Shown in pieces: positions 1 through 10,479 of a stretch of DNA of 11,141 nucleotides; positions within the stretch are counted from its first letter, which is position 1; each line of letters opens with the position of its first letter. The notes under the pieces were generated by a model. The model was not told the DNA's origin. It did no database searches and saw nothing but the letters and a program-made list of their open reading frames with translations. Source of the DNA: Octopus sinensis (lineage: Eukaryota); the NCBI RefSeq assembly GCF_006345805.1, contig NW_021827076.1, forward strand, positions 1-11,141, written 5' to 3'. The position numbers and the translations under genes were made by a program.

Positions 1-120
1 AGATACAAGACCTTGTATGTCCTTCCCACAATTACGACATCTGGCACGGCTTCCGGTCTTTCCAGGAATAATACGTTTATCAAAATAAGCCCACAAAGAA
101 TCACGCTTTCTTCCAGACAT
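1..120 (-). CDS. hAT transposase N-terminus, BED zinc finger (partial, 40 aa)
   Basis: Manual translation from ATG at 120: MSGRKRDSLWAYFDKRIIPGKTGSRARCRNCGKDIQGLVS. It has the W-x-Y/F motif plus CxxC of a BED finger. Not in the supplied ORF track. Confidence 0.85.
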   Translation of the reverse strand, partial: MSGRKRDSLWAYFDKRIIPGKTGSRARCRNCGKDIQGLVS

Positions 121-969: not shown

Positions 970-1010
970 TGTCACCGGTTTTAGAGCGGACCCGGTTTTT
1001 GGAAGGACCA
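970..1010 (+). repeat. Terminal inverted repeat of the Ginger-like element (downstream of the integrase gene)
   Basis: TGTCACCGGTTTTAGAGCGGACCCGGTTTTTGGAAGGACCA is the reverse complement of 10300-10340 with 4 mismatches. Confidence 0.9.
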
Positions 1011-1313
1011 CACAAAAAATTGTATAAATCGTTTTATTTTATCCTGAAAATAGTTATACAATAAATTAAACCATGTTTAAATAATTTCTTAAGCTGTTTC
1101 TGATTTTATCATTGCTCACAAAACCAACATACCCTTCAAAAGTGCTTTTTAAATTTTAAATAAGTAATTTTATTTGATTTTTGTGTAAAATATTAAAAAA
1201 ACATTATATCTTTATTTAATGATTTTAAACCTAAATATTTTAAAAATTCAAATCTTAAAATAACTGTCAATAAAAAACTATTCTAACCCACAAGGTTTGA
1301 TATAAAAATTCAA

Positions 1314-1340
1314 CTAGTCCCCTATGCGGCCTACGGCCGC
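1314..1340 (-). other. Helitron-3'-end-like motif (GC hairpin plus CTAG)
   Basis: GCGGCC-TAC-GGCCGC hairpin (1326-1340), followed on the minus strand 8 nt later by CTAG|T. No matching 5' TC terminus identified. Confidence 0.4.
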
Positions 1341-1370
1341 GGTATCTCTTCACTTAGAGAATTTTAAAAT

Positions 1371-1478
1371 TTAGTTAAACTTTTTTATTCTAGAAATATT
1401 AATATTTTTATGGACATTTCCATTTTCATCTTCTAAAGAATAGTTGTAATTATTTTCTTCGATAATTTTATATTTTGT
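1371..1478 (-). pseudogene. Integrase C-terminal segment and stop codon
   Basis: After collapsing the ATTTTGT duplication, the frame continues NITK/YKIIEENNYNYSLEDENGNVHKNINISRIKKFN* (TAA 1371-1373). It resembles the SH3-like C-terminal region of gypsy/Ginger integrases. Confidence 0.65.
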
Positions 1479-2292
1479 TGTATCTTGTCACCAAATGTGT
1501 TAATGCCAAACTGGCCGATTTCATCGAGGCATTTGGCTTAATCTCAGATAATCAGCTTGGGACGAGGAAGCAATGTCAAGGCGCCAAAGAGCAAGCCCTC
1601 ATTAACCAATGCTTAAATAAAGAGTATGGAAATGGCCTCTATTCTGCTTGGGTCGATGTGAAGAAGGCATTTGACTCAGTTGATCACGAGTTCTTGTTCC
1701 ACGTATTGGATTGCTCTGGAATACCACATTGGATTGTCAGCTTTGTAAAAAACATAGTCAAGAAGTGGACAGTAAACTTACATATCGATGGGAAAAGAAT
1801 TGGGAAAGTAAAGTTAAGCCGGGGAATACTCCAAGGAGATTCATTGTCCCCGCTGCTATTCGTTATGGCGATGGATCCCCTAAGCAGGATGCTTAACTCC
1901 ATGTTTCCCAAACTCGAAATTAGTCGGGAAGATCCCAATATGTTGACATACTCCACCAATCATTTCTTCTTTATTGACGATCTGAAAATAGTTGCCCTCA
2001 AAGAAGATGTGTTAGTCAAAATGATGGAGGCTGTTAATGGATTTTTTGAAAGTGTCGGCCTAGAGATGAATTCCGAAAAATCAGCATCTAATGTGGAATC
2101 TTTATCATGCTGTGAGACTGTCGATGGAATCAACGGATATCGCTACTTGGGTGTACTTGAAGATGGCGGAAGTAATGTTCTCAAGAATAAAGTTATGGAC
2201 TCCATATTGGAGAATGTCAAGAAGAGGATAACTATGTTGTCAAAAACAAACCTGAATGCTGTAAATTTGTTTCGTGGAATCAATGAATATGC
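1479..2292 (+). mobile_element. Internal reverse-transcriptase fragment of an R4/Dong-like non-LTR retrotransposon, truncated at both ends
   Basis: Open frame with QLG, AWVDVKKAFDSVDH, RGILQGDSLSPLLF, FIDD and YRYLG motifs. Flanked by ATTTTGT at 1472-1478 and 2293-2299. The clade call rests on motif resemblance only. Confidence 0.8.
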
Positions 2293-2399
2293 ATTTTGTG
2301 ATGTTTTTCAAAACAGATTCACAATTTTCAGATGAAATATTATCCGAGTTTGCTTGATAACAAATTTCCGCGTTTTCATCTTCAGCGTCAAAAGCCATT
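2293..2399 (-). pseudogene. Integrase segment between the LINE and RT-fragment insertions
   Basis: After collapsing the CCATT duplication, the frame continues NTM/AFDAEDENAEICYQANSDNISSENCESVLKNITK. It is in frame and AT-rich like the rest of the gene, but has no diagnostic motif. Confidence 0.65.
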
Positions 2400-2600
2400 A
2401 GACCTTCAAGCTGTTTTGTATTTGGCCGGATCACAGCCTCCAAAGCACGGATTACATTACAACGCTCAGGCTCCTTCACTCTTGAGTTCAGGAGCCCCGA
2501 GATGCTGATGCATTCTCGGCTGAGCTTGCAAGATTGAACCCGTTGGCGAAGGCGGCCATAAACTTGCCTTAGTTACTCCGCAAAAGTCAGCACTAGTCCT

Positions 2601-3424
2601 AAGGGGATTCCGCGATGGATCTCCAATCGGGACCTAGAGCTGCACCTGAAGGAAACCCTCAGTTCGGTGTTCGTTCTCGAGCGATTCACGCGAGATGGTC
2701 TCAACATCCCAGTTGCTAAGCTGACGCTTGACTCACGAGCTGAAGCTACTTCTTTGATCCGCACCGGAATCACAGCTGGTTTCTGCCTTATCACCTGTGA
2801 ATGGTTCAGACCTCCTGTCGTCCGATGTTTCCATTGTCAGAGATTCGGACACCTGTCCCGTAACTGTCAAGAAAAAGCCCGGTGCTTATACTGCGGCAAG
2901 GACCACGACCGAAGGGAATGCCCAGGCAGCAAACAAAGTCTAGTGGAGCCCTGCGGTCGGCATTGTATCAATTGTGACCGCCCCGGCCACCTCGCATCGT
3001 ATGGTGGATGCCCTACGGCCAAAGCTGCAACAGCAGCTAAATGGGCCGCCCGCGCAGAAGCAATGCCTCGGTCTCCTAACCCAACCCGCATGGTAATGGT
3101 AAAAGCTAAGCCGGTCACGCCTATCTGGAAAGTACGGCCGCTAATAACCCCGTGTGTGGCGGACGCCCATACCCAGACGACGCAAGTCGTTGAGGTGGTG
3201 CGCAGAGCATGCAGGCCCCTGTCGCCGAGGCTATGAAACCGAGGCCCGTCAGCCCAATAAGGAACGGTACTCAGCAGGCCAAAACGCAGGCGAAGGTAGA
3301 CTCTCAAAACAAGGATGCTCTGTTGGAATTTTACCAACGCTGTGTCGACGCACTGCTGAAACTGGGAGTCAAACCCAAGAAGCTAGTAGAGCTCCTATCA
3401 GAGAGGAGCTCGTCAGCAAAATGA
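2601..3424 (+). pseudogene. LINE ORF1 (gag-like nucleic-acid-binding protein) remnant with three zinc knuckles
   Basis: KGIPRWISNRDLELHL... then CFHCQRFGHLSRNC, CLYCGKDHDRREC and CINCDRPGHLASYGGC. Frameshifts are inferred near 2605 and before 3236; the probable final frame ends at TGA 3422-3424. Confidence 0.8.
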
Positions 3425-3600
3425 CCACGCCACTAAAAATCATCGCTGTGAATGCCCGATCTGTCAAGAGACGGCACCTCGACTTCGTTGAGATGGTAAA
3501 CAGCGGCCATCCTGACTTAATCGTCGTCAACGAGTCTAAGCTGAAAGAAGGTCAATGCTTCGAATTGCCAGGATACTGCTCCCTTGACCTGAAATGGAGA
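3421..3600 (+). pseudogene. LINE ORF2 N-terminus, apurinic/apyrimidinic endonuclease fragment
   Basis: MTTPLKIIAVNARSVKRR...PDLIVVNESKL...FELPGY matches the N(A/V)xS and (Q/N)E(T/S)KL motifs of APE domains. Similarity stops near 3600 (approximate deletion junction). Confidence 0.8.
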
Positions 3601-3901
3601 AATAAGTCTACGCCGATCTACGCGCCCCGCTACCCAACTGGGCAGAGGAGAAATCTCCACTAATCGAGAAAGTCATCCTTGATTCCATCCGAACTTTTCG
3701 TCGGCGGTCTCAGGTGACCGATCTTTTCGTGGATCGCGTCTGAAATTCAATCAGAGAGTGACTCTTCAAAAACCCGGCTCATATATTCCCTTAGGACGAA
3801 TCTCGGCAGAGCTCGACTGTCTTCGCAGTCGTCTCGTTTAACCTCGTCCAACCTTTTTACTTAGTCTCTGTTTTACTTACAATAAAACTTTCCATTCCAT
3901 T

Positions 3902-3987
3902 CCATTGTATTTGGCAGAAAATCACTTCCATAATTCATAAAAATGCTGAATGGTCTATGCTTTGTAGTTGCATGGACCGTCTTATTA
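3902..3987 (-). pseudogene. Integrase segment following the 3988-8835 insertion
   Basis: After collapsing the TATTA duplication, the frame continues YDYN/KTVHATTKHRPFSIFMNYGSDFLPNTM, the conserved YN-x-T-x-H-x-T-T-x-x-x-PF motif of retroviral-type integrases. Confidence 0.85.
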
Positions 3988-3992
3988 TGTCA

Positions 3993-4029
3993 CATGCCCC
4001 ACGCGTTACCATGCCCCACGCGTTACCAT
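3993..4029 (+). repeat. 17-bp tandem repeat inside the left TIR of the MITE-like element
   Basis: CATGCCCCACGCGTTAC x2.2; degenerate copies occur in the right TIR. Confidence 0.9.
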
Positions 4030-4182
4030 TGCTCTAAATTTCTAAAATTTCAATTAAAAATATTTAGACGATTGAAATATATTTACTTATTAATTTAAAA
4101 ATTAATAATATTATGGATTTTTATTTTTTCAATGCTTAACCATTAAAATTAAAAAACAATAAATTAAGCATGCTGTTTATTG

Positions 4183-4536
4183 TCGGGGTTAGGGCTAAGG
4201 TAAAGATTAGGGTTAGGGTAAAGGTTAGGGTAAAGGTTGGGGTTAGGGTAAAGGTTAGGGTAAAGGTTGGGGTAAAGGTTGGGGTTAGGGTTAGGGTAAA
4301 GGTTAGGGTAAAGGTTGGGGTTAGGGTAAAGGTTAGGGTAAAGGTTGGGGTTAGGGTTAGGGTAAAGGTTAGGGTAAAGGTTGGGGTTAGGGTAAAGGTT
4401 GGGGTTAGGGTAAAGGTTAGGGTAAAGGTTGGGGTTAGGGTTAGGGTAAAGGTTAGGGTAAAGGTTGGGGTTAGGGTAAAGGTTAGGGTAAAGGTTGGGG
4501 TTAGGGTAAAGGTTAGGGTAAAGGTTGGGGTTAGGG
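4183..4536 (+). repeat. Interstitial telomere-like hexamer array with higher-order structure
   Basis: 59 in-register hexamers, mostly TTAGGG (A), TAAAGG (B) and TTGGGG (C), arranged as ABABC (30 nt) and AABABC (36 nt) units. The first few units are degenerate. Confidence 0.97.
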
Positions 4537-4548
4537 TTTGAAAAAATT

Positions 4549-7500
4549 TGAAAGTGCTTGTTGTGATACTGTCACGATCAAATCAATCTTTCTTATAACC
4601 GCGTTAATGTAGAATTTTCGAATGGAGATACAAAGATTTTTTTTTTTTCACGTGTTGGTTCTTGTGGTGTTTTCTTGTCTCGTTCCTATCTCGTTCTAAA
4701 TCAATTCCAATCCAATCTTCCTTTCTTATTTTTCTTTTTTTTTCCAATTTACCCCCTTTTTATCTTTCCTTTCCAATCTTGTTCTTCCCTCTCTTTCTTG
4801 TCTCTCTATCTCTCTATTTTTCTTTCTCAATCTTATCTTTACTCTATCTACTAACTCACTTTTATCACTCTCTATCTTTTCATACCTCTTCAATGGCCCA
4901 CAAGCATTTTCTCCATGAAAACACCCCATGTGGCATTTGCCTCTCATCCTCCTCCAAAAAGAACGGTCTTCGCTGCTCTTCGTGTTTCACCTTCCTCCAC
5001 CTTAGCTGCCTTAAAATCCCAAAAAAATCCGCAGCTATTATCCCAAAACTACTCTGCCCTTCTTGCCTTCCGTTGTCCAGTAACTCCCCTAAAATGTGTG
5101 GCGAGATAGATGTCGCAGCTCAAGTCCCATCCTGTCCGAGCGCCGAAGAGGTGCTACTATCTATCTCTCTAATACGTAAAAATCGCTATGTTCTCACTAA
5201 GATTCCTAAATCCGCACGCCCTTCGGCGGCTGACGCCCTTTCCACCGTTATTCAAAGCGCTCTGGACCTGAAAACTCCGTTCGCTTGGATCCGCGTCTTC
5301 TTGTTCCCCCTTTATGCCTTGGGATTGCCTTACAACTGCAAATCCGACTGCTCCTTATCCTCATTAGTCAAGCATAATATCTCCAGTTTCCTGAACTCTT
5401 CCTCCTGTGACCTCTTCCTATCGGAGATTATTACCGACAACTGTCCATCCACTTCTTCCAACATAACTGATTCTTGCCGTGAGGAGTCCAATTCGGCTCC
5501 TGACTCAGGCGCTTACCTCGGCCACCGTATCATGGCCAAGCTAATGGAAGGCGACGTACGCGCTGCGCTGAGGGTACTGGCATCCAACGGGGGAGTTCTG
5601 GAATCCTCACCTGGTGTGGTCAACACCCTTAGAAACAAACATCCATCGAGCCCATCCGATCTCCGACCTTTTCCATCCACCAATTCAATTCCACTTGGCC
5701 CGGCTCTTAGCTTCGAAGCTGTGTGCCAGGCCATAAACTCATTTTCGCCAAGCAGTAGCGGAGGATTGGACGGTCTCCGTCCCAGTCATCTTCGCAACCT
5801 AATCTCGAGCCAAATCGGTGAATCGGGCAGGCGGCTTGTCAATGTCGTAAATTCTCTTATAAACCAAATGCTTGCTGCTGACATCCCCCCCTTCGCTCGC
5901 AATCTCTTGTTCTCGGCCAATCTTCTTCCCTTTTCGAAAAAGGATGGTGGAGTCCGCCCAATCGCGGTTGGCAATGTCTTTCGTCGGTTGGCGTCCAAGA
6001 TTGCCTGCTGGTCTGTTTCTCCCGACCTGAGCAAAAACTTCGTCCCCACTCAAGTCGGAGTCGGAGTCCCTTCCGGTTGTGAGGCGGCTGTCCACGCCGC
6101 CAGGCGGTATCTCTCTACAGCAACACCGAACAGAGTCCTTGTCAAACTGGATATTTCTAACGCTTTCAACAGCGTCCGACGTGATTCCTTATTAGATGCT
6201 TGCTTGTCTCGGTGTCCATCAATTTACCGTTATGTTGATCTGTCCTACGGTTCCCCCAGTTCTTTGATTTGTGGTTCTTCAGCCATCTCTTCTGAAAACG
6301 GAGTCCAACAGGGGGACCCTCTGGCCCTCTCCTGTTCTCTCTTGCTATTGACAGTGCCGTTAAAGCATGCCAGTCCGAGTTCAACGTCTGGTATCTGGAC
6401 GATGCCACCATCGGGGGCCCCGCATGCTCAATCCTCGAAGATCTGAACAATATAATCCCCGCACTTTTTTCCCTTGGCCTGTCTATAAACCCTTCGAAAT
6501 CTGAGATTTTTAACATCTCTTATGATCCCAATTATTTTAACACATCTATCTATCCATTATTTAATTCGCTTCTCCCTAATATCAAGGCTGTTACATCCTC
6601 TGATCTTATTGTCCTTGGCTCCCCAATCTTTTCCTCGGCTATCCCTTCCTTCCTGGAGCTTAAGCTCACAAAAATACAAGAATCTATAGCCACACTTAAA
6701 ACAGTCGACGCACATGCTGCCTTCTTCCTGATCAAAAATTTCCTTGCTTTCCCCCGGTTACAATTTTTTTACAGTCCGCCCCTTGTCACCGCCATCATTG
6801 TGCTCTTCAGCACTTCGATCTTTTGCTAAGAAACTCAATTTCGGCTAATACTAATGTCAATTTTGATGATGCCGGGTGGCAACAAGCGATCCTGCCAGTC
6901 CGTCACGGCGGACTAGGTCTGCAAGCTCCTTCTGTTTTGGCTCTCCCTTTCTACCTTTCTTCGTCATACCGCTGTAGTCCGCTTGTCCTTAGGATTCTTT
7001 CTCCCCATTCCGAATCCGTTCTGGACCAAGAGCTTTCTCATGGTATCGAAGTTTGGTCTTCCCGTGGCTTCGACATTCCTTGCTATCCCTGCTATACAAA
7101 GGCGTGGACGGAAACAATGTTTCTTCAGTTATACAATTCGCTATTATCCTCCTGTGATCAACACCGGCGCGCTTGTCTTTTGGCCGCATCCTCCGAATGG
7201 AGTGGCGCTTGGCTCAACGCATACCCTTCCGGAAATACGGGAACCCTGCTGGACCCAAAAAGTGTGCAGATTGGCATTTCTCTTAGACTTGGTCTGGACA
7301 TCTGCTTTCCACACACTTGCCGCTGTGGTTCTGTCGTAGATCGGAAAGGTCTCCATCCACTTTCCTGTCGCAAAAGCCCTGGCCGGATTCCCAGGCATTC
7401 TGAATTAAATTCCGTAGTAAAACATGCACTTGAAGCAGCCGGATTTCCCTGTCAGCTGGAGCCTCCTGGCCTTCTAAGGGAGGATGGTAAGAGACCTGAC

Positions 7501-7900
7501 GGGGTCTCACTCTTTCCCTACAAGAACGGGAAAGCAATCGTCTGGGATGCGACATGCTCTGATACTTTCGCATCATCATGTCTTTCCTTGTCGGCGGTCG
7601 AGGCTGGCTCAGCAGCCAAGAGGGCGGAGACGAAGAAGGCATCTAAGTACGCCTCCCTGATGGACCGTTTCATCTTCGAACCGGTGTCAGTGGAAACTTC
7701 CGGTGTACTTGGCCCGTCTACTCTCCGTTTCCTCTCGAAGATCGGAAGGTCATTGGGAAGGGCGAGGAACGACCCCCGTGAACTGATGTGGCTTTTTGAG
7801 CGCATCTCTCTCGCAGTTCTAAGGGGGAACTGTTCCTCGATCCTCCTCTCGGCTGCGGTTCCGCCTCTAATTAGTGATTTCTTTACCTTATAAACTGTCA

Positions 7901-7944
<44 letters not shown>
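4549..7944 (+). mobile_element. Apparently full-length CRE-clade non-LTR retrotransposon (RT plus restriction-like endonuclease)
   Basis: Pyrimidine-rich 5' UTR, a single long ORF and a 39-nt A run at 7906-7944 directly after the stop. The 5' boundary is tentative, based on a candidate AAAAAATT duplication (4541-4548 and the end of the A run to 7946). Confidence 0.85.
4893..7893 (+). CDS. CRE-clade polyprotein, about 1000 aa after repairing two 1-bp deletions: PHD finger, RT, CCHC knuckle, PD-(D/E)xK endonuclease
   Basis: N-terminal CGIC..CSSC..HLSC..CPSC. RT motifs KKDGGVRPIAVG, KLDISNAFNS, GVQQGDPL and WYLDD. C-terminal CRCG..HPLSC, RHSELN, EP..DGKRPDG..WDAT and AETKKASKY. Frameshifts at about 6323-6325 and in the T run at 6764-6770. 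Confidence 0.9.
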
Positions 7945-7946
<2 letters not shown>

Positions 7947-8182
7947 AGTTTACATGAAAAGAATCAAATAAAGGACAAAATATAATTTTAAATTTTATAA
8001 ACTATCAAATTATGTTGCTTAAGCTTTCACACAATTCACATCATTTAAAATATGTTTTAATGTCCGTAGCAGTCATAATGTTTTGTTGTATTAAAAATAT
8101 ATATTTTAATTTATTTATTTTAAAGCATCTTTTAGTATATCATTAAATTGTACTCTAATTAACTTTATATATAATTTGAATT

Positions 8183-8729
8183 CGGACGGCACGCTCTCTC
8201 ATGCAGACGCAGTGCAGGCCGGTTTCCAAGACATCACGCAATGAACCTAATTGTCAAGAACGCTTTGCATGCAGCTGGTTTCCCGGCACAGCTGGAGCCT
8301 CCTGGTCTCATCCGCACAGACGGAAAAAGACCTGATGGGATAACAATTTTCCCGTACACCAACGGGAAGTGCCTTGTTTGGGACTGCGCTTGCACCGACA
8401 CCTACTCAGAGACAAACCTGATCGCCTCAGCCTCCTCTCCAGGATATGCTTCACAGAACTACGAAAAAATTAAAATATTCAGAGCTCAAGGACAGGTTCA
8501 TAGTGCAACCGATTATTGTGGAGTCATCTGGAGTCTTCGGTCCGGAATCAATCTCTTTTATTAGGAAACTTGGATCCCTGATCTCGGTTCAGACGAAAGA
8601 TAGAAGGGAGACCGAATGGCTGTTTCAACGCCTTTCAACAACCGTTGTCAGAGGTAATAGCCACGCTATCCTTTCTGCTCTTAAGCAACCTTAATCCTTT
8701 TAACTTATTTTTCTTTTATAACATTGGCT
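8183..8729 (+). mobile_element. 5'-truncated 3' fragment of a second, diverged CRE family (endonuclease domain only)
   Basis: GRHALSCRRSAGRFPRHHAMN...EPPGLIRTDGKRPDG...WDCACTDT...KYSELKDRF...WLFQRLS...RGNSHAIL*, with one frameshift at the A run 8472-8475. Candidate 9-bp duplication ATTTGAATT at 8174-8182 and 8730-8738. No clear poly(A). Confidence 0.85.
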
Positions 8730-8939
8730 ATTTGAATTTTATTGCATTATGATTGTTTTAATTTTTCTTAAAAATTAAAAATCATATTTCTCAGAGGTAA
8801 CGAGTGGGGCATAGTAATCGCTGAGGCATGTGACATATTATAATCATACGTAATTTTTTTAATAATGTCCACATATCTTCCAAAATTTCCATTCGATGCA
8901 CTAGTCGAAGATATTCAGTTTTTAATGGATTGGTTAAAT

Positions 8940-8965
8940 CTAAAAATTCATAAATTAGTAATTAC
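8940..8965 (-). other. Integrase intron 4 (26 nt, phase 2)
   Basis: GTAATTACTAATTTATGAATTTTTAG. Removal restores QGQVER/FNQSIK. Confidence 0.9.
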
Positions 8966-9210
8966 CTCTCCACTTGGCCTTGTATCCACGGTGCGCGTGG
9001 TCTTCCACATACGTGATATATATCAAATTCAGCACATAACTCGTTCAAATGGGAATTGTTAAACTCTTTTCCATTGTCGGTTTGCAAAATAATTGGAGCA
9101 CCAATAATATAGAAAATATTTCTGAAGAGACTAGATATTTCTTTTGCTGTCTTAGTTTTAGATAATTCAACAGCTGCATACTTTGAAAACGAATCAATGA
9201 TAACAAGAAC

Positions 9211-9233
9211 CTAAAATATAACAATGGTAATAC
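9211..9233 (-). other. Integrase intron 3 (23 nt, phase 0)
   Basis: GTATTACCATTGTTATATTTTAG. Removal restores the frame to W/VLVIIDSFSKY. Confidence 0.9.
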
Positions 9234-9359
9234 CCATGAATTTGAATCGTTTAATTCCGAATATCTCCTTAAGTCAATGAGATCGGCTATGTATCTATCA
9301 CGCGGGCCTCTCGCAATGATTGGCCTAATAGGAGGTTTTGTTGCCATTAATCTCTTTGA

Positions 9360-9386
9360 CTAATCGCCTTATTTTAATTATTATAC
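9360..9386 (-). other. Integrase intron 2 (27 nt, phase 0)
   Basis: GTATAATAATTAAAATAAGGCGATTAG. Removal deletes in-frame stops and joins CVFCQ to SKRLMATKPP. Confidence 0.9.
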
Positions 9387-9509
9387 CTGACAAAAAACAC
9401 AGTTTTTAATAACATTTTCAATCTCATTTCGAGTAACACCGTAAATTTTTTCTGACAGCTGACTAATCATTATTCTATCTCTGCCAAAATGATTAGAATT
9501 ATGTGCCTT

Positions 9510-9536
9510 CTAAACATAAGGAGATTTATAGATAAC
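9510..9536 (-). other. Integrase intron 1 (27 nt, phase 0)
   Basis: GTTATCTATAAATCTCCTTATGTTTAG. Removal deletes an in-frame TAG and joins MIE to KAHNSNH. Confidence 0.8.
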
Positions 9537-9739
9537 CTCAATCATTGTTAGCTTTAGTTCTTTCTCTTCTATACAAAAAAATCTGAGTAAGCAATTGTTT
9601 TTTCGAATAAATGCCTTTCCGTCAGAGAATTCAAATTTTTTTGCGTGAATTCTAAATCTATGCTTTTCTCTTTTTTCAATCACTTCATCTAGATCCCTCA
9701 ACTCTTTGATTTTTTTAATTTTTTGAAGATTAGCATTTG

Positions 9740-10151
9740 GCTGAAGACTAAGCTATGGATAATGGATTTGGATGGTCGTGAGTTCGATTCCGAAGGAGGA
9801 CAGTTTTCATCCTGGGGCTAATTCTCGTTATCGTTCCCCTGCCCGTGAGGCAACGAGTACTTCTGGCACGACACAGTTGGAAATGGGGATCTCTTACCTT
9901 CCGGGCTTAGCGTGGCGTTACGGGGTCCACCATGTCAGTTGGAAATTCCTTCGGATATGGCAACGCTCAGGAGGCACTTAATGCCTTCCGAAAAAGGACT
10001 CTTAGCTTCTCAGACCCTGGGACATCGTCGTCTCAGGCCGATCTTGCGGGAAGGATTGAACCTTTCAGAAGGATCTCCCTCGTTTGGATCGGCGATCACG
10101 GGATTAACTATAATTAACTGGCTTGCCCGTATTGGTCTTTAAATAATAATA
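9740..10151 (+). mobile_element. 412-bp retroposed insert with a (TAA)n tail; SINE or truncated LINE 3' end
   Basis: 11-bp TSD ATTAGCATTTG (9729-9739, 10152-10162). Ends ...CTTTAAATAATAATA. Pol III box-B-like GTTCGATTC at 9782-9790. Removal restores the integrase start MGFVVLSNAN/LQKIKK. Confidence 0.8.
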
Positions 10152-10299
10152 ATTAGCATTTGAAAGTACAACGAAGCCCATTTTTTATGTTGAATTTAAT
10201 TAATTAATTATTACAATAATATAATAAAAAATAAAACCAATTTTTATTTTTTAATGAAAATAAATTATTTTATCCATTTTTTATTTTAATATACGCACC

Positions 10300-10340
10300 T
10301 GGTCCTTCCAAAAACCGGGTCTGCTCAGAAACCGGTCACA
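10300..10340 (-). repeat. Terminal inverted repeat of the Ginger-like element (upstream of the integrase gene)
   Basis: Reverse complement reads TGTGACCGGTTTCTGAGCAGACCCGGTTTTTGGAAGGACCA; followed on the + strand by ATAAA. Confidence 0.9.
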
Positions 10341-10479
10341 ATAAATAACAACAAATGAATAAATTATTGGGAAGGGAATTGAGGAGGTCCAACAAAGGGC
10401 CCACAGATTAACCGATCGTTGGTCGCACGCAAATTTAAACTGTGAGGTTTTTCGAATATATTTTTTACATTAGCATTAA

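What the first reader, a model, noticed from the sequence alone, without database searches (positions are those of the whole stretch)
3988..8835. A mobile element that carries a telomere-like array and landed inside a probable relative's integrase gene
The insert has TIRs and a 5-bp TSD and starts TGTCAC, like the outer element. It may therefore be a non-autonomous element moved by the same kind of Ginger-like integrase. Without the two CREs it is about 0.9 kb and non-coding, and about 40% of it is a TTAGGG-variant array. Such an element would scatter telomere-like, G-quadruplex-prone tracts through the genome. These could recruit telomere-binding proteins, seed chromosome healing or attract telomere-targeting retroelements (inference).
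Basis: partly seen in the sequence, partly recalled or inferred. Interest (0 to 1): 0.7.

Follow-up and report, generated by a model that had tools for sequence, protein, structure and literature searches.

The report
Small transposon carrying telomere-like repeats
A roughly 0.9-kb non-coding cut-and-paste transposon holding a 348-bp array of degenerate telomere-like hexamers sits inside the integrase gene of a related transposon. It is an ordinary nested insertion, and nothing here shows that the array works as, or spreads as, a telomere.

Summary
Positions 3988-8835 form an insert with TGTCACA...TGTGACA termini, 40-bp terminal inverted repeats (TIRs; 33/40 matches, at most 24 in 300 shuffles) and a perfect 5-bp target-site duplication (TSD), TATTA. 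It splits the C-terminal coding part of a minus-strand integrase gene. That gene belongs to a larger element (970-10340) with 41-bp TIRs and a 5-bp TSD, ATAAA.

Both elements share one TIR architecture: TGTCA followed by two tandem 17-bp subrepeats. The subrepeat sequences differ, so they are the same kind of element but different families.

The array (4189-4536) is 58 hexamers in perfect register: 25 TTAGGG, 20 TAAAGG, 11 TTGGGG and 2 degenerate. They are organised in 30/36/66-bp higher-order units. This is a telomere-like minisatellite, not a telomere tract. No run of TTAGGG exceeds two units, and no canonical G-quadruplex motif is present.

Two retrotransposons related to R2 and CRE account for the rest of the insert. 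Nine loci with relatives of them show no telomere-like arrays.

No other copy of the insert could be found, so the decisive test, whether other copies carry the array, could not be run.

The parts
3983..3987 (.). Left copy of the 5-bp target-site duplication, TATTA
3988..4027 (+). Left TIR of the insert: TGTCA plus two exact 17-bp subrepeats CATGCCCCACGCGTTAC (3993-4009, 4010-4026)
4028..4188 (.). AT-rich non-coding spacer of the insert
4189..4536 (+). Telomere-like minisatellite, G-rich on the + strand: 58 hexamers in perfect register (25 TTAGGG, 20 TAAAGG, 11 TTGGGG, 1 CTAAGG, 1 TAAAGA). Higher-order units AABABC / ABABC, with a 66-bp super-unit. Units are degenerate at the left edge only.
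4537..4550 (.). Short AT-rich spacer (TTTGAAAAAATT) between the array and the proposed start of CRE1. AAAAAATT here is a possible TSD with the A-run plus TT at 7937-7946.
   Evidence: the boundary is inferred, not proven
4551..7944 (+). CRE1, a near full-length non-LTR retrotransposon of the RLE type. T/C-rich 5' UTR (about 4649-4892), ATG at 4893, PHD finger, RT, CCHC zinc knuckle and RLE region, stop codon at 7891-7893, A39 tail at 7906-7944. Two frameshifts at about 6311-6320 and 6748-6769. The 5' end is uncertain within about 4538-4650.
7945..8183 (.). AT-rich non-coding interior of the insert
8184..8694 (+). CRE2, a 5'-truncated 3' fragment of a second family of the same retrotransposon group (58% and 45% aa identity to CRE1 over two segments). 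One frameshift at about 8464-8474. Its 3' end may extend to about 8770 (AAAAATTAAAAAT).
8695..8795 (.). AT-rich sequence: the CRE2 3' UTR and/or interior of the insert
8796..8835 (-). Right TIR of the insert (33/40 to the left arm), with two 17-bp subrepeats; the inner one at 8797-8813 has 2 mismatches
8836..8840 (.). Right copy of the TSD, TATTA
970..10340 (-). Outer integrase-bearing TIR element. TIRs at 970-1010 and 10300-10340, each TGTCA/TGTGA plus two 17-bp subrepeats CCGGTTTT-N6-GAC. TSD ATAAA at 965-969 and 10341-10345.
3873..10181 (-). Integrase gene of the outer element (ATG at 10181, stop codon at 3875-3873). It is interrupted by the insert and by a SINE-like block. It has four 23-27-nt GT..AG introns and one in-frame TGA at a position where relative P0125 has W. 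The spliced ORF is 308 aa with H2C2 and DD35E motifs.

Best explanation
The 4.85-kb insert is a non-autonomous cut-and-paste DNA transposon, about 0.9 kb before later additions, of the integrase-dependent Ginger2/TDD-like kind. An integrase of the same kind as the one in the outer element, but with a different DNA-binding specificity, would bind the paired 17-bp subrepeats just inside each TGTCA terminus. It would then cut at the TG...CA ends and insert the element with a 5-bp stagger into AT-rich DNA. Here the target was TATTA, at codons 273-274 of the 308-codon integrase gene of a related, otherwise nearly intact element. The interior of the insert holds a 348-bp minisatellite built from three telomere-like hexamers. 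Its 30/36/66-bp higher-order structure shows that it grew by unequal exchange or slippage of multi-hexamer blocks, not by telomerase synthesis. Two RLE-type non-LTR retrotransposons related to R2 and CRE then inserted into the AT-rich spacer to the right of the array, by target-primed reverse transcription at A-run/TTA sites. Shown: boundaries, TIRs, TSDs, the shared TIR architecture, disruption of the integrase, array structure and retrotransposon identity. Inferred: mobilisation by a cognate integrase; the order of events; that the array belongs to the TIR element rather than to CRE1 (about 0.7); and that the array is family-wide rather than private to this copy (about 0.4).
For: TIRs and TSDs are far beyond chance. 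The 17-bp subrepeat gives 3 matches in the window against 0.01 expected, all inside the two TIRs. The outer TIRs have the same layout: two 17-bp repeats starting at nucleotide 6. The empty site restores the integrase frame. The integrase matches rve (5e-10) and Integrase_H2C2 (2.8e-6), both above the Pfam cut-offs, has D-x35-E spacing, and its relatives are stand-alone proteins of 310-340 aa. TGTNR termini and 4-5-bp TSDs are the published Ginger2/TDD hallmarks (PMC2836005). The array is in perfect hexamer register with a 66-bp super-period. CRE1 has PHD and RT domains, and its C-terminal profile matches the RT and zinc/RLE region of solved R2 structures 8gh6 and 8ibw. Relatives of the retrotransposons in nine loci have no telomere-like arrays. 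They do have T/C-rich 5' UTRs like 4649-4892, so the G-rich array is not a feature of that family.
Against: This is a single copy: no second copy of the TIRs or of the array was found in any searchable collection, and the source genome is not in the protein collections. Multi-copy status, the cognate integrase and family-wide carriage of the array are therefore untested. The 5' end of CRE1 cannot be fixed: the candidate TSDs (AAAAAATT at 4543; AAATTA at 4161, upstream of the array) carry only 2-3 informative bases. The array could therefore be a 5'-terminal part of CRE1, as in MoTeR1. The array's right edge is sharp while its left edge is degenerate, which would also fit truncation by an insertion. 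Placement of the integrase among Ginger2 transposases by phylogeny was not done.
Confidence: 0.6

Rival explanations
1. The array is private to this copy. A short telomere-like seed, or none, was present in the family, and the 348-bp array expanded locally after insertion. In that case the family does not carry or scatter telomere-like tracts.
For: The 66-bp higher-order periodicity and the near absence of private point mutations in the right-hand 50 or so hexamers indicate recent amplification in place. No other copy with the array was found.
Against: The absence of other copies reflects the absence of the host genome from the collections, not a real negative. Internal tandem arrays are commonly family-wide in small TIR elements (own knowledge).
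Confidence: 0.3
2. The array is tied to the retrotransposon rather than to the TIR element. Either it is a 5'-terminal telomere-like tract of CRE1, as MoTeR1 carries TTCGGG(TTTGGG)n, or CRE1 homed to the array edge as telomere-specific CRE-clade elements do.
For: The array lies 13-110 bp upstream of the CRE1 5' UTR, on the same strand as both retrotransposon copies. CRE-clade elements with an RLE that target telomere repeats are known: MoTeR1, GilM and GilT (PMC10088271, PMC7367193). The 3' flank begins TTAG. The TSD evidence cannot exclude a CRE1 start upstream of the array.
Against: There are no telomere-like repeats downstream of the poly(A) tail. The TTA after the tail also follows the A-run in CRE2 and in two copies on the Octopus-assembly contig, so it is a family feature and not a telomere remnant. 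Nine relatives' loci, including copies with their 5' ends, carry no such arrays. The relatives' 5' UTRs are T/C-rich, not G-rich.
Confidence: 0.13
3. The insert is a solo LTR or another integrase-made relic rather than a TIR DNA transposon. Solo LTRs also have TG...CA ends and 5-bp TSDs.
For: TG...CA termini and a 5-bp TSD are shared with LTR retrotransposons (PMC2836005, PMC6839031). LTRs often contain minisatellites (own knowledge).
Against: The 40-bp inverted termini, each made of two 17-bp subrepeats, mirror the TIRs of the adjacent element. That element encodes only an integrase with introns and no LTR-type RT or RNase H. LTR inverted termini are typically only a few bases long (own knowledge).
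Confidence: 0.05

Closest known systems
[quoted passage not shown]
   Same: Cut-and-paste elements with TIRs of tens of bp, TGTNR termini, AT-rich targets and a 4- or 5-bp TSD. The transposase is a retroviral-type integrase with H2C2 and DDE motifs and without GPY/F or YPYY motifs.
   Different: Metazoan Ginger2 elements were reported with 4-bp TSDs in an RTATAY target; here both TSDs are 5 bp (TATTA, ATAAA), as in TDD-4/5. The integrase is short (308 aa), has four introns of 23-27 nt, and its closest database relatives are only 48-60% identical environmental sequences. Phylogenetic placement was not tested.
Small non-autonomous TIR elements (MITE-like) with an internal tandem-repeat array
   Same: A short non-coding element bounded by TIRs and a TSD, much of whose interior is a tandem array that varies by unequal exchange (own knowledge of the class).
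   Different: The repeat unit here is a set of telomere-like hexamers, and the superfamily is integrase-dependent rather than Tc1/mariner, PIF or hAT. Copy number is unknown.
Heterogeneous interstitial telomeric sequences
   Same: An internal, degenerate TTAGGG-derived array in strict hexamer phase.
   Different: It lies inside a TIR- and TSD-bounded mobile element. Only 43% of units are canonical, and they are arranged in a 66-bp higher-order repeat.
MoTeR1 of Magnaporthe oryzae (CRE-clade, RLE-bearing telomeric retrotransposon; PMC7367193)
   Same: An RLE-type non-LTR retrotransposon with a run of variant telomere-like hexamers next to its 5' end.
   Different: MoTeR1 sits within true telomere repeats on both sides. 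Here nothing telomeric follows the poly(A) tail, the relatives lack such tracts, and the whole unit is interstitial inside a DNA transposon.
R2 (solved structures 8gh6, 8ibw)
   Same: RT followed by a C-terminal zinc knuckle and RLE region (profile match); no apurinic/apyrimidinic-type endonuclease domain detected.
   Different: The N-terminus carries a PHD finger instead of the R2 zinc-finger/Myb module. No rDNA target. A single-sequence search of the C-terminal part finds no solved structure.

Membership tests
Ginger2/TDD DNA transposons | Terminal inverted repeats of tens of bp | tested here: met
   Insert 33/40 and outer element 37/41, against shuffle maxima of 24 and 25
Ginger2/TDD DNA transposons | Termini 5'-TGTNR...YNACA-3' | tested here: met
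   Insert TGTCA...TGACA; outer element TGTCA...TCACA; criterion from PMC2836005
Ginger2/TDD DNA transposons | TSD of 4 bp (metazoan) or 5 bp (TDD-4/5) | tested here: met
   Exactly 5 bp in both elements: TATTA and ATAAA; 4 or 5 bp according to PMC10045372
Ginger2/TDD DNA transposons | AT-rich target resembling RTATAY | tested here: inconclusive
   Both targets are AT-only but neither is the RTATAY palindrome, and there are only two sites
Ginger2/TDD DNA transposons | Transposase is an integrase with H2C2 and DDE motifs, lacking GPY/F and YPYY, with no RT or RNase H of its own (outer element) | tested here: met
   Spliced 308-aa ORF matches rve and Integrase_H2C2 above the Pfam cut-offs, with D-x35-E spacing and no GPY/GPF/YPYY strings. 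The only RTs inside are nested non-LTR pieces
Ginger2/TDD DNA transposons | Transposase groups with Ginger2/TDD transposases in a phylogeny | not tested
   No reference Ginger sequences were available. More distant hits carry chromodomains and lack the zinc domain.
Non-autonomous derivative of an integrase-type TIR family | Shares its TIRs with an autonomous partner and occurs in multiple TSD-flanked copies | not testable with these tools
   TIR and array patterns gave 0 hits in the metagenome, genome and viral contig collections. The window's ORFs are absent from the protein collection.
CRE clade of non-LTR retrotransposons | RT with a C-terminal CCHC zinc knuckle and RLE region, and no apurinic/apyrimidinic-type endonuclease | tested here: met
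   PF00078 match; invariant C/C/H/C and PD...D columns in 37 homologues; profile match to R2 residues 933-984; no Exo_endo_phos match
CRE clade of non-LTR retrotransposons | RT phylogeny places it with CRE1/2, SLACS, CZAR and MoTeR rather than with R2, NeSL, R4 or Hero | not tested
No reference sequences.
Telomere-specific retrotransposons (MoTeR, GilM/T, TRAS/SART type) | Telomere repeats on both sides of the insertion | tested here: not met
   The 3' flank reads TTAGTTTACATG..., and TTAGGG is absent outside 4189-4536
Telomere-specific retrotransposons (MoTeR, GilM/T, TRAS/SART type) | Family members recurrently associated with telomere-type arrays | tested here: not met
   Nine loci with relatives (L001-L009) have no such arrays. 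These relatives are only 39-57% identical.
Functional telomere-type tract | Long uninterrupted runs of the canonical repeat and canonical G-quadruplex motifs | tested here: not met
   25/58 canonical units, longest run 2; 0 G-quadruplex motifs with loops of 7 nt or less
Solo LTR | TG...CA ends with a 4-6-bp TSD; the same sequence occurs as direct repeats around gag-pol elsewhere | tested here: inconclusive
   The first part is met. The second part is not testable. The 40-bp subrepeat TIRs, shared in layout with the integrase-only outer element, argue against it.

The most novel reading that the evidence does not exclude
A family of integrase-mobilised (Ginger2-like) non-autonomous transposons carries a telomere-like minisatellite as standard cargo and so seeds interstitial telomere-like tracts around the genome. 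These tracts would in turn act as preferred landing zones for RLE-type (CRE-like) retrotransposons. A DNA transposon would then be distributing the landing sites of a retrotransposon, in an animal lineage with ultra-short introns.
Probability: 0.08. Interest if true: 0.65.

Novelty: new member of a known kind. Interest (0 to 1): 0.3.

Why it matters
If other copies also carry the array, this would be a clear case of a cut-and-paste transposon spreading interstitial telomere-like repeats. That would offer one explanation for how such tracts become dispersed in a genome. As it stands, the locus is a well-resolved example of nested mobile elements. It adds a Ginger2/TDD-like lineage with 5-bp TSDs and a distinctive TIR layout (TGTCA plus two 17-bp repeats), whose integrase gene has introns of 23-27 nt. 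This is useful for transposon annotation but not surprising to a specialist.

Tried and rejected
- **Other copies by DNA.** I scanned for the TIR pattern (TGTCACATGCC-N12-ATGCCCCAC) and for 30-32-nt stretches of the array's higher-order repeat. Metagenome, genome and viral contig collections all gave 0 hits.
- **Source genome by protein.** An exact look-up of ten window ORFs among 15 billion proteins found none. The best homologues are 53-57% identical for CRE1 and 48-60% for the integrase.
- **Telomere targeting by the retrotransposon family.** Nine relatives' loci (L001-L009) have no telomere-like arrays. L006 and L007 are 99% duplicates of each other, so they are not independent.
- **The 5' end of CRE1 from a TSD.** This is undecidable. 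The candidates carry only 2-3 informative bases because the tail is poly(A) and the flanks are AT-rich.
- **N-terminal homologues of CRE1.** Only one was found, P0165 at 39% identity.
- **TIRs around integrase relatives.** No flanking TIR pair was recognisable in L004 (Enteropsectra breve) or L005.
- **Single-sequence search of the CRE1 C-terminal part against solved structures.** No hit; only the profile reached R2.
- **Rfam and tRNA scans of the window.** Nothing found, so the SINE-like block is not a recognised RNA family.
- **Ciliate origin.** I considered this because of the tiny introns and the TTGGGG units. I rejected it because the stops that looked in-frame are explained by GT..AG introns, and the retrotransposon ORFs read in the standard code.
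- **Assembly artefact.** Rejected, because the matched TIRs and TSD and the restored integrase frame make the structure coherent.

Full report
**Observation.** The window is AT-rich eukaryotic DNA (background 23-35% GC) packed with mobile-element remains.

The reported insert is real and its coordinates are right. It begins TGTCACA at 3988 and ends TGTGACA at 8835. The two 40-nt ends match in inverted orientation at 33/40 positions, against a maximum of 24/40 in 300 shuffles. The insert is flanked by TATTA at 3983-3987 and at 8836-8840, and the next base out differs on each side, so the duplication is exactly 5 bp.

The surrounding element runs from 970 to 10340. Its TIRs match at 37/41 (shuffle maximum 25) and it has a 5-bp duplication, ATAAA.

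**What the insert interrupted.** I joined the two flanks and removed a second insertion, a 412-bp SINE-like block at 9740-10151 flanked by an 11-bp duplication, ATTAGCATTTG. This gives a minus-strand gene. Once four GT..AG introns of 27, 27, 23 and 26 nt are removed, it reads as a 308-aa integrase.
- It has an H-x3-H...C-x2-C zinc domain and a D,D-x35-E core.
- It matches Pfam rve (5e-10) and Integrase_H2C2 (2.8e-6), both above the curated cut-offs.
- Its only internal defect is one TGA, at a position where relative P0125 has tryptophan.
- The insert lies between codons 273 and 274 (...ITYDYN|KTVH...), so it did land in the integrase coding sequence.

Relatives of this integrase are rare: 44 hits, the best 48-60% identical, from environmental assemblies. 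The only named one is from the microsporidian Enteropsectra breve, at 39% identity. The closest are stand-alone proteins of 310-340 aa.

An element of about 2.2 kb bounded by TIRs that encodes only such an integrase, with TGTNR ends and a 5-bp AT-rich duplication, fits the published definition of Ginger2/TDD transposons. Those have 4-bp duplications in animals and 5-bp in TDD-4/5 (PMC2836005), summarised as '4 or 5 bp' in PMC10045372. Phylogenetic placement was not tested.

**New evidence linking the two elements.** The two elements share more than TGTCAC. In both, the TIR consists of TGTCA followed, from nucleotide 6, by two tandem 17-bp subrepeats.
- Insert: CATGCCCCACGCGTTAC twice. The window holds 3 matches against 0.01 expected by chance, all inside the two TIRs.
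- Outer element: CCGGTTTT-N6-GAC twice in each arm.

The layout is the same but the sequences are unrelated. This supports 'same kind of integrase'. It argues against mobilisation by the outer element's own enzyme, so a cognate partner should exist elsewhere.

**The array.** From 4189 to 4536 there are 58 hexamers with no indel: 25 TTAGGG (A), 20 TAAAGG (B), 11 TTGGGG (C), plus CTAAGG and TAAAGA at the left edge. The order is AxxAABABCABABCBCAABABCABABCAABABCABCABABCAABABCABABCABABCA. That is blocks of AABABC and ABABC, forming a 66-bp super-unit. Tandem Repeats Finder also reports a period of 66 with 5.1 copies.

Three things follow:
- The array is telomere-like in its hexamer content, and TTAGGG occurs nowhere else in the window.
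- It grew by duplication of multi-hexamer blocks, as a minisatellite does, and not by telomerase.
- It is a poor telomere mimic. Canonical units never run more than two in a row. There is no canonical G-quadruplex motif with loops of 7 nt or less, and only 8 long-loop candidates.

**The two retrotransposons.** CRE1 runs from about 4551 to 7944.
- It has a T/C-rich 5' UTR, a PHD finger, an RT domain, a C-terminal CCHC and PD...D module, and an A39 tail.
- It has two frameshifts.
- A profile of 37 homologues matches the RT and the zinc/endonuclease region of solved R2 structures.
- It is therefore an RLE-type non-LTR element. Membership of the CRE clade proper was not tested.

CRE2 (8184-8694) is a 5'-truncated copy of a different family.

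**Is the array tied to the retrotransposon?** RLE-bearing CRE-clade elements are known to target telomeres (MoTeR1, GilM, GilT; PMC10088271), and MoTeR1 carries TTCGGG(TTTGGG)n at its 5' end (PMC7367193). I therefore tested this link.
- Nine loci with relatives show no telomere-like arrays. They include copies with intact 5' regions on a contig of the Octopus sinensis assembly and on environmental contigs.
- The relatives' 5' UTRs are T/C-rich with their own short repeats, like 4649-4892 here, and not G-rich.
- Nothing telomeric follows the CRE1 tail.
- The TTA after the tail also follows the A-run in CRE2 and in two copies on the Octopus-assembly contig, so it is a family feature.

The 5' end of CRE1 cannot be fixed from a target duplication, because the candidates carry only 2-3 informative bases. 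This rival therefore keeps some weight, about 0.13.

**What could not be done.** That needs the source genome.
- Pattern scans for the TIR and for the array in the metagenome, genome and viral contig collections returned nothing.
- None of ten window ORFs is in the 15-billion-protein collection.

Copy number, the cognate integrase and family-wide carriage of the array are therefore unknown.

**Verdict.** The structural interpretation, a non-autonomous element of the same integrase-dependent kind nested in a relative's integrase gene, is well supported and strengthened by the shared TIR layout. The claim that the element 'carries' the array as mobile cargo is plausible but untested, and the higher-order structure shows substantial local growth. 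The functional ideas (recruiting telomere proteins, G-quadruplexes, chromosome healing, attracting telomere-specific retroelements) have no support here, and two of them are weakened.

This is a new member of a known kind: a Ginger2/TDD-like non-autonomous element with an internal minisatellite. Interest is modest (0.3). The most novel reading still open is a transposon family that spreads telomere-like landing pads for RLE-type retrotransposons; I give it about 0.08.

Noticed in passing
window 8841-10181 and 3873-3987, minus strand: The integrase gene of the outer element has four GT..AG introns of only 27, 27, 23 and 26 nt. Among animals, introns under 30 nt are reported only in myxobolid myxozoans and in Dicyema (PMC13644364). 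The host may therefore be one of these parasites, or a non-animal with tiny introns. The best named relative of CRE1 lies on an AT-rich contig of the Octopus sinensis assembly, and octopuses host dicyemids.
   Followed up: partly
window 9740-10151: A GC-richer 412-bp block is flanked by an 11-bp direct repeat, ATTAGCATTTG (9729-9739 and 10152-10162). It has an A-rich (TAA)n-like tail and a B-box-like GAGTTCGATTCC motif. It looks like a tRNA-derived SINE inserted in the N-terminal coding part of the integrase. ARAGORN and Rfam find nothing.
   Followed up: partly
window 8841-9100, minus strand (codon 247 of the spliced integrase): The only in-frame stop in the spliced integrase is a TGA where relative P0125 has tryptophan. 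Apart from the two insertions, the outer element is therefore one point mutation away from an open reading frame, which points to a young element.
   Followed up: yes
window 1-120, minus strand: The start of a gene encodes a BED zinc finger (MSGRKRDSLWAYFDK...C..C; Pfam zf-BED, E 4.5e-4, at the cut-off) and runs off the left edge. It may be a hAT-type transposase or a ZBED gene.
   Followed up: partly
window 1475-2335 and 2400-3700, plus strand: Two further non-LTR retrotransposon pieces lie inside the outer element. One is an RT fragment of about 40% GC (RVT_1, E 7.7e-26). The other is a 55% GC 5' portion with a CCHC zinc-knuckle ORF1 and the start of an endonuclease-like ORF2. The outer element therefore holds at least four nested insertions.
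   Followed up: partly
L003 (Octopus sinensis assembly contig VCDQ01012976.1) 370-13134; window 7906-7947 and about 8757-8770: Relatives of CRE1 occur in clusters, and in one case head-to-tail: the upstream copy ends with an A35 tail at 12034-12068 on the minus strand. In four of four cases the A-run at the 3' end is followed by TTA. This suggests an A-run/TTA target or a conserved 3' end for this retrotransposon group.
   Followed up: partly
L005 283-1987: In the closest integrase relative (P0121, environmental contig), the integrase gene is followed by an ORF with a Peptidase_C48 (Ulp1-like) domain. This pairing was described for Ginger1 transposases (PMC2836005). It hints that this integrase lineage may sit between the Ginger groups as they are described.
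   Followed up: no
L006 and L007 (ENA ERZ19489075 contigs 348 and 9254): Two contigs carry 99%-identical segments of about 10 kb. Each has a CRE1 relative about 1.3 kb from a minus-strand rve (integrase) fragment. This is a segmental duplication rather than two independent insertions.
   Followed up: partly
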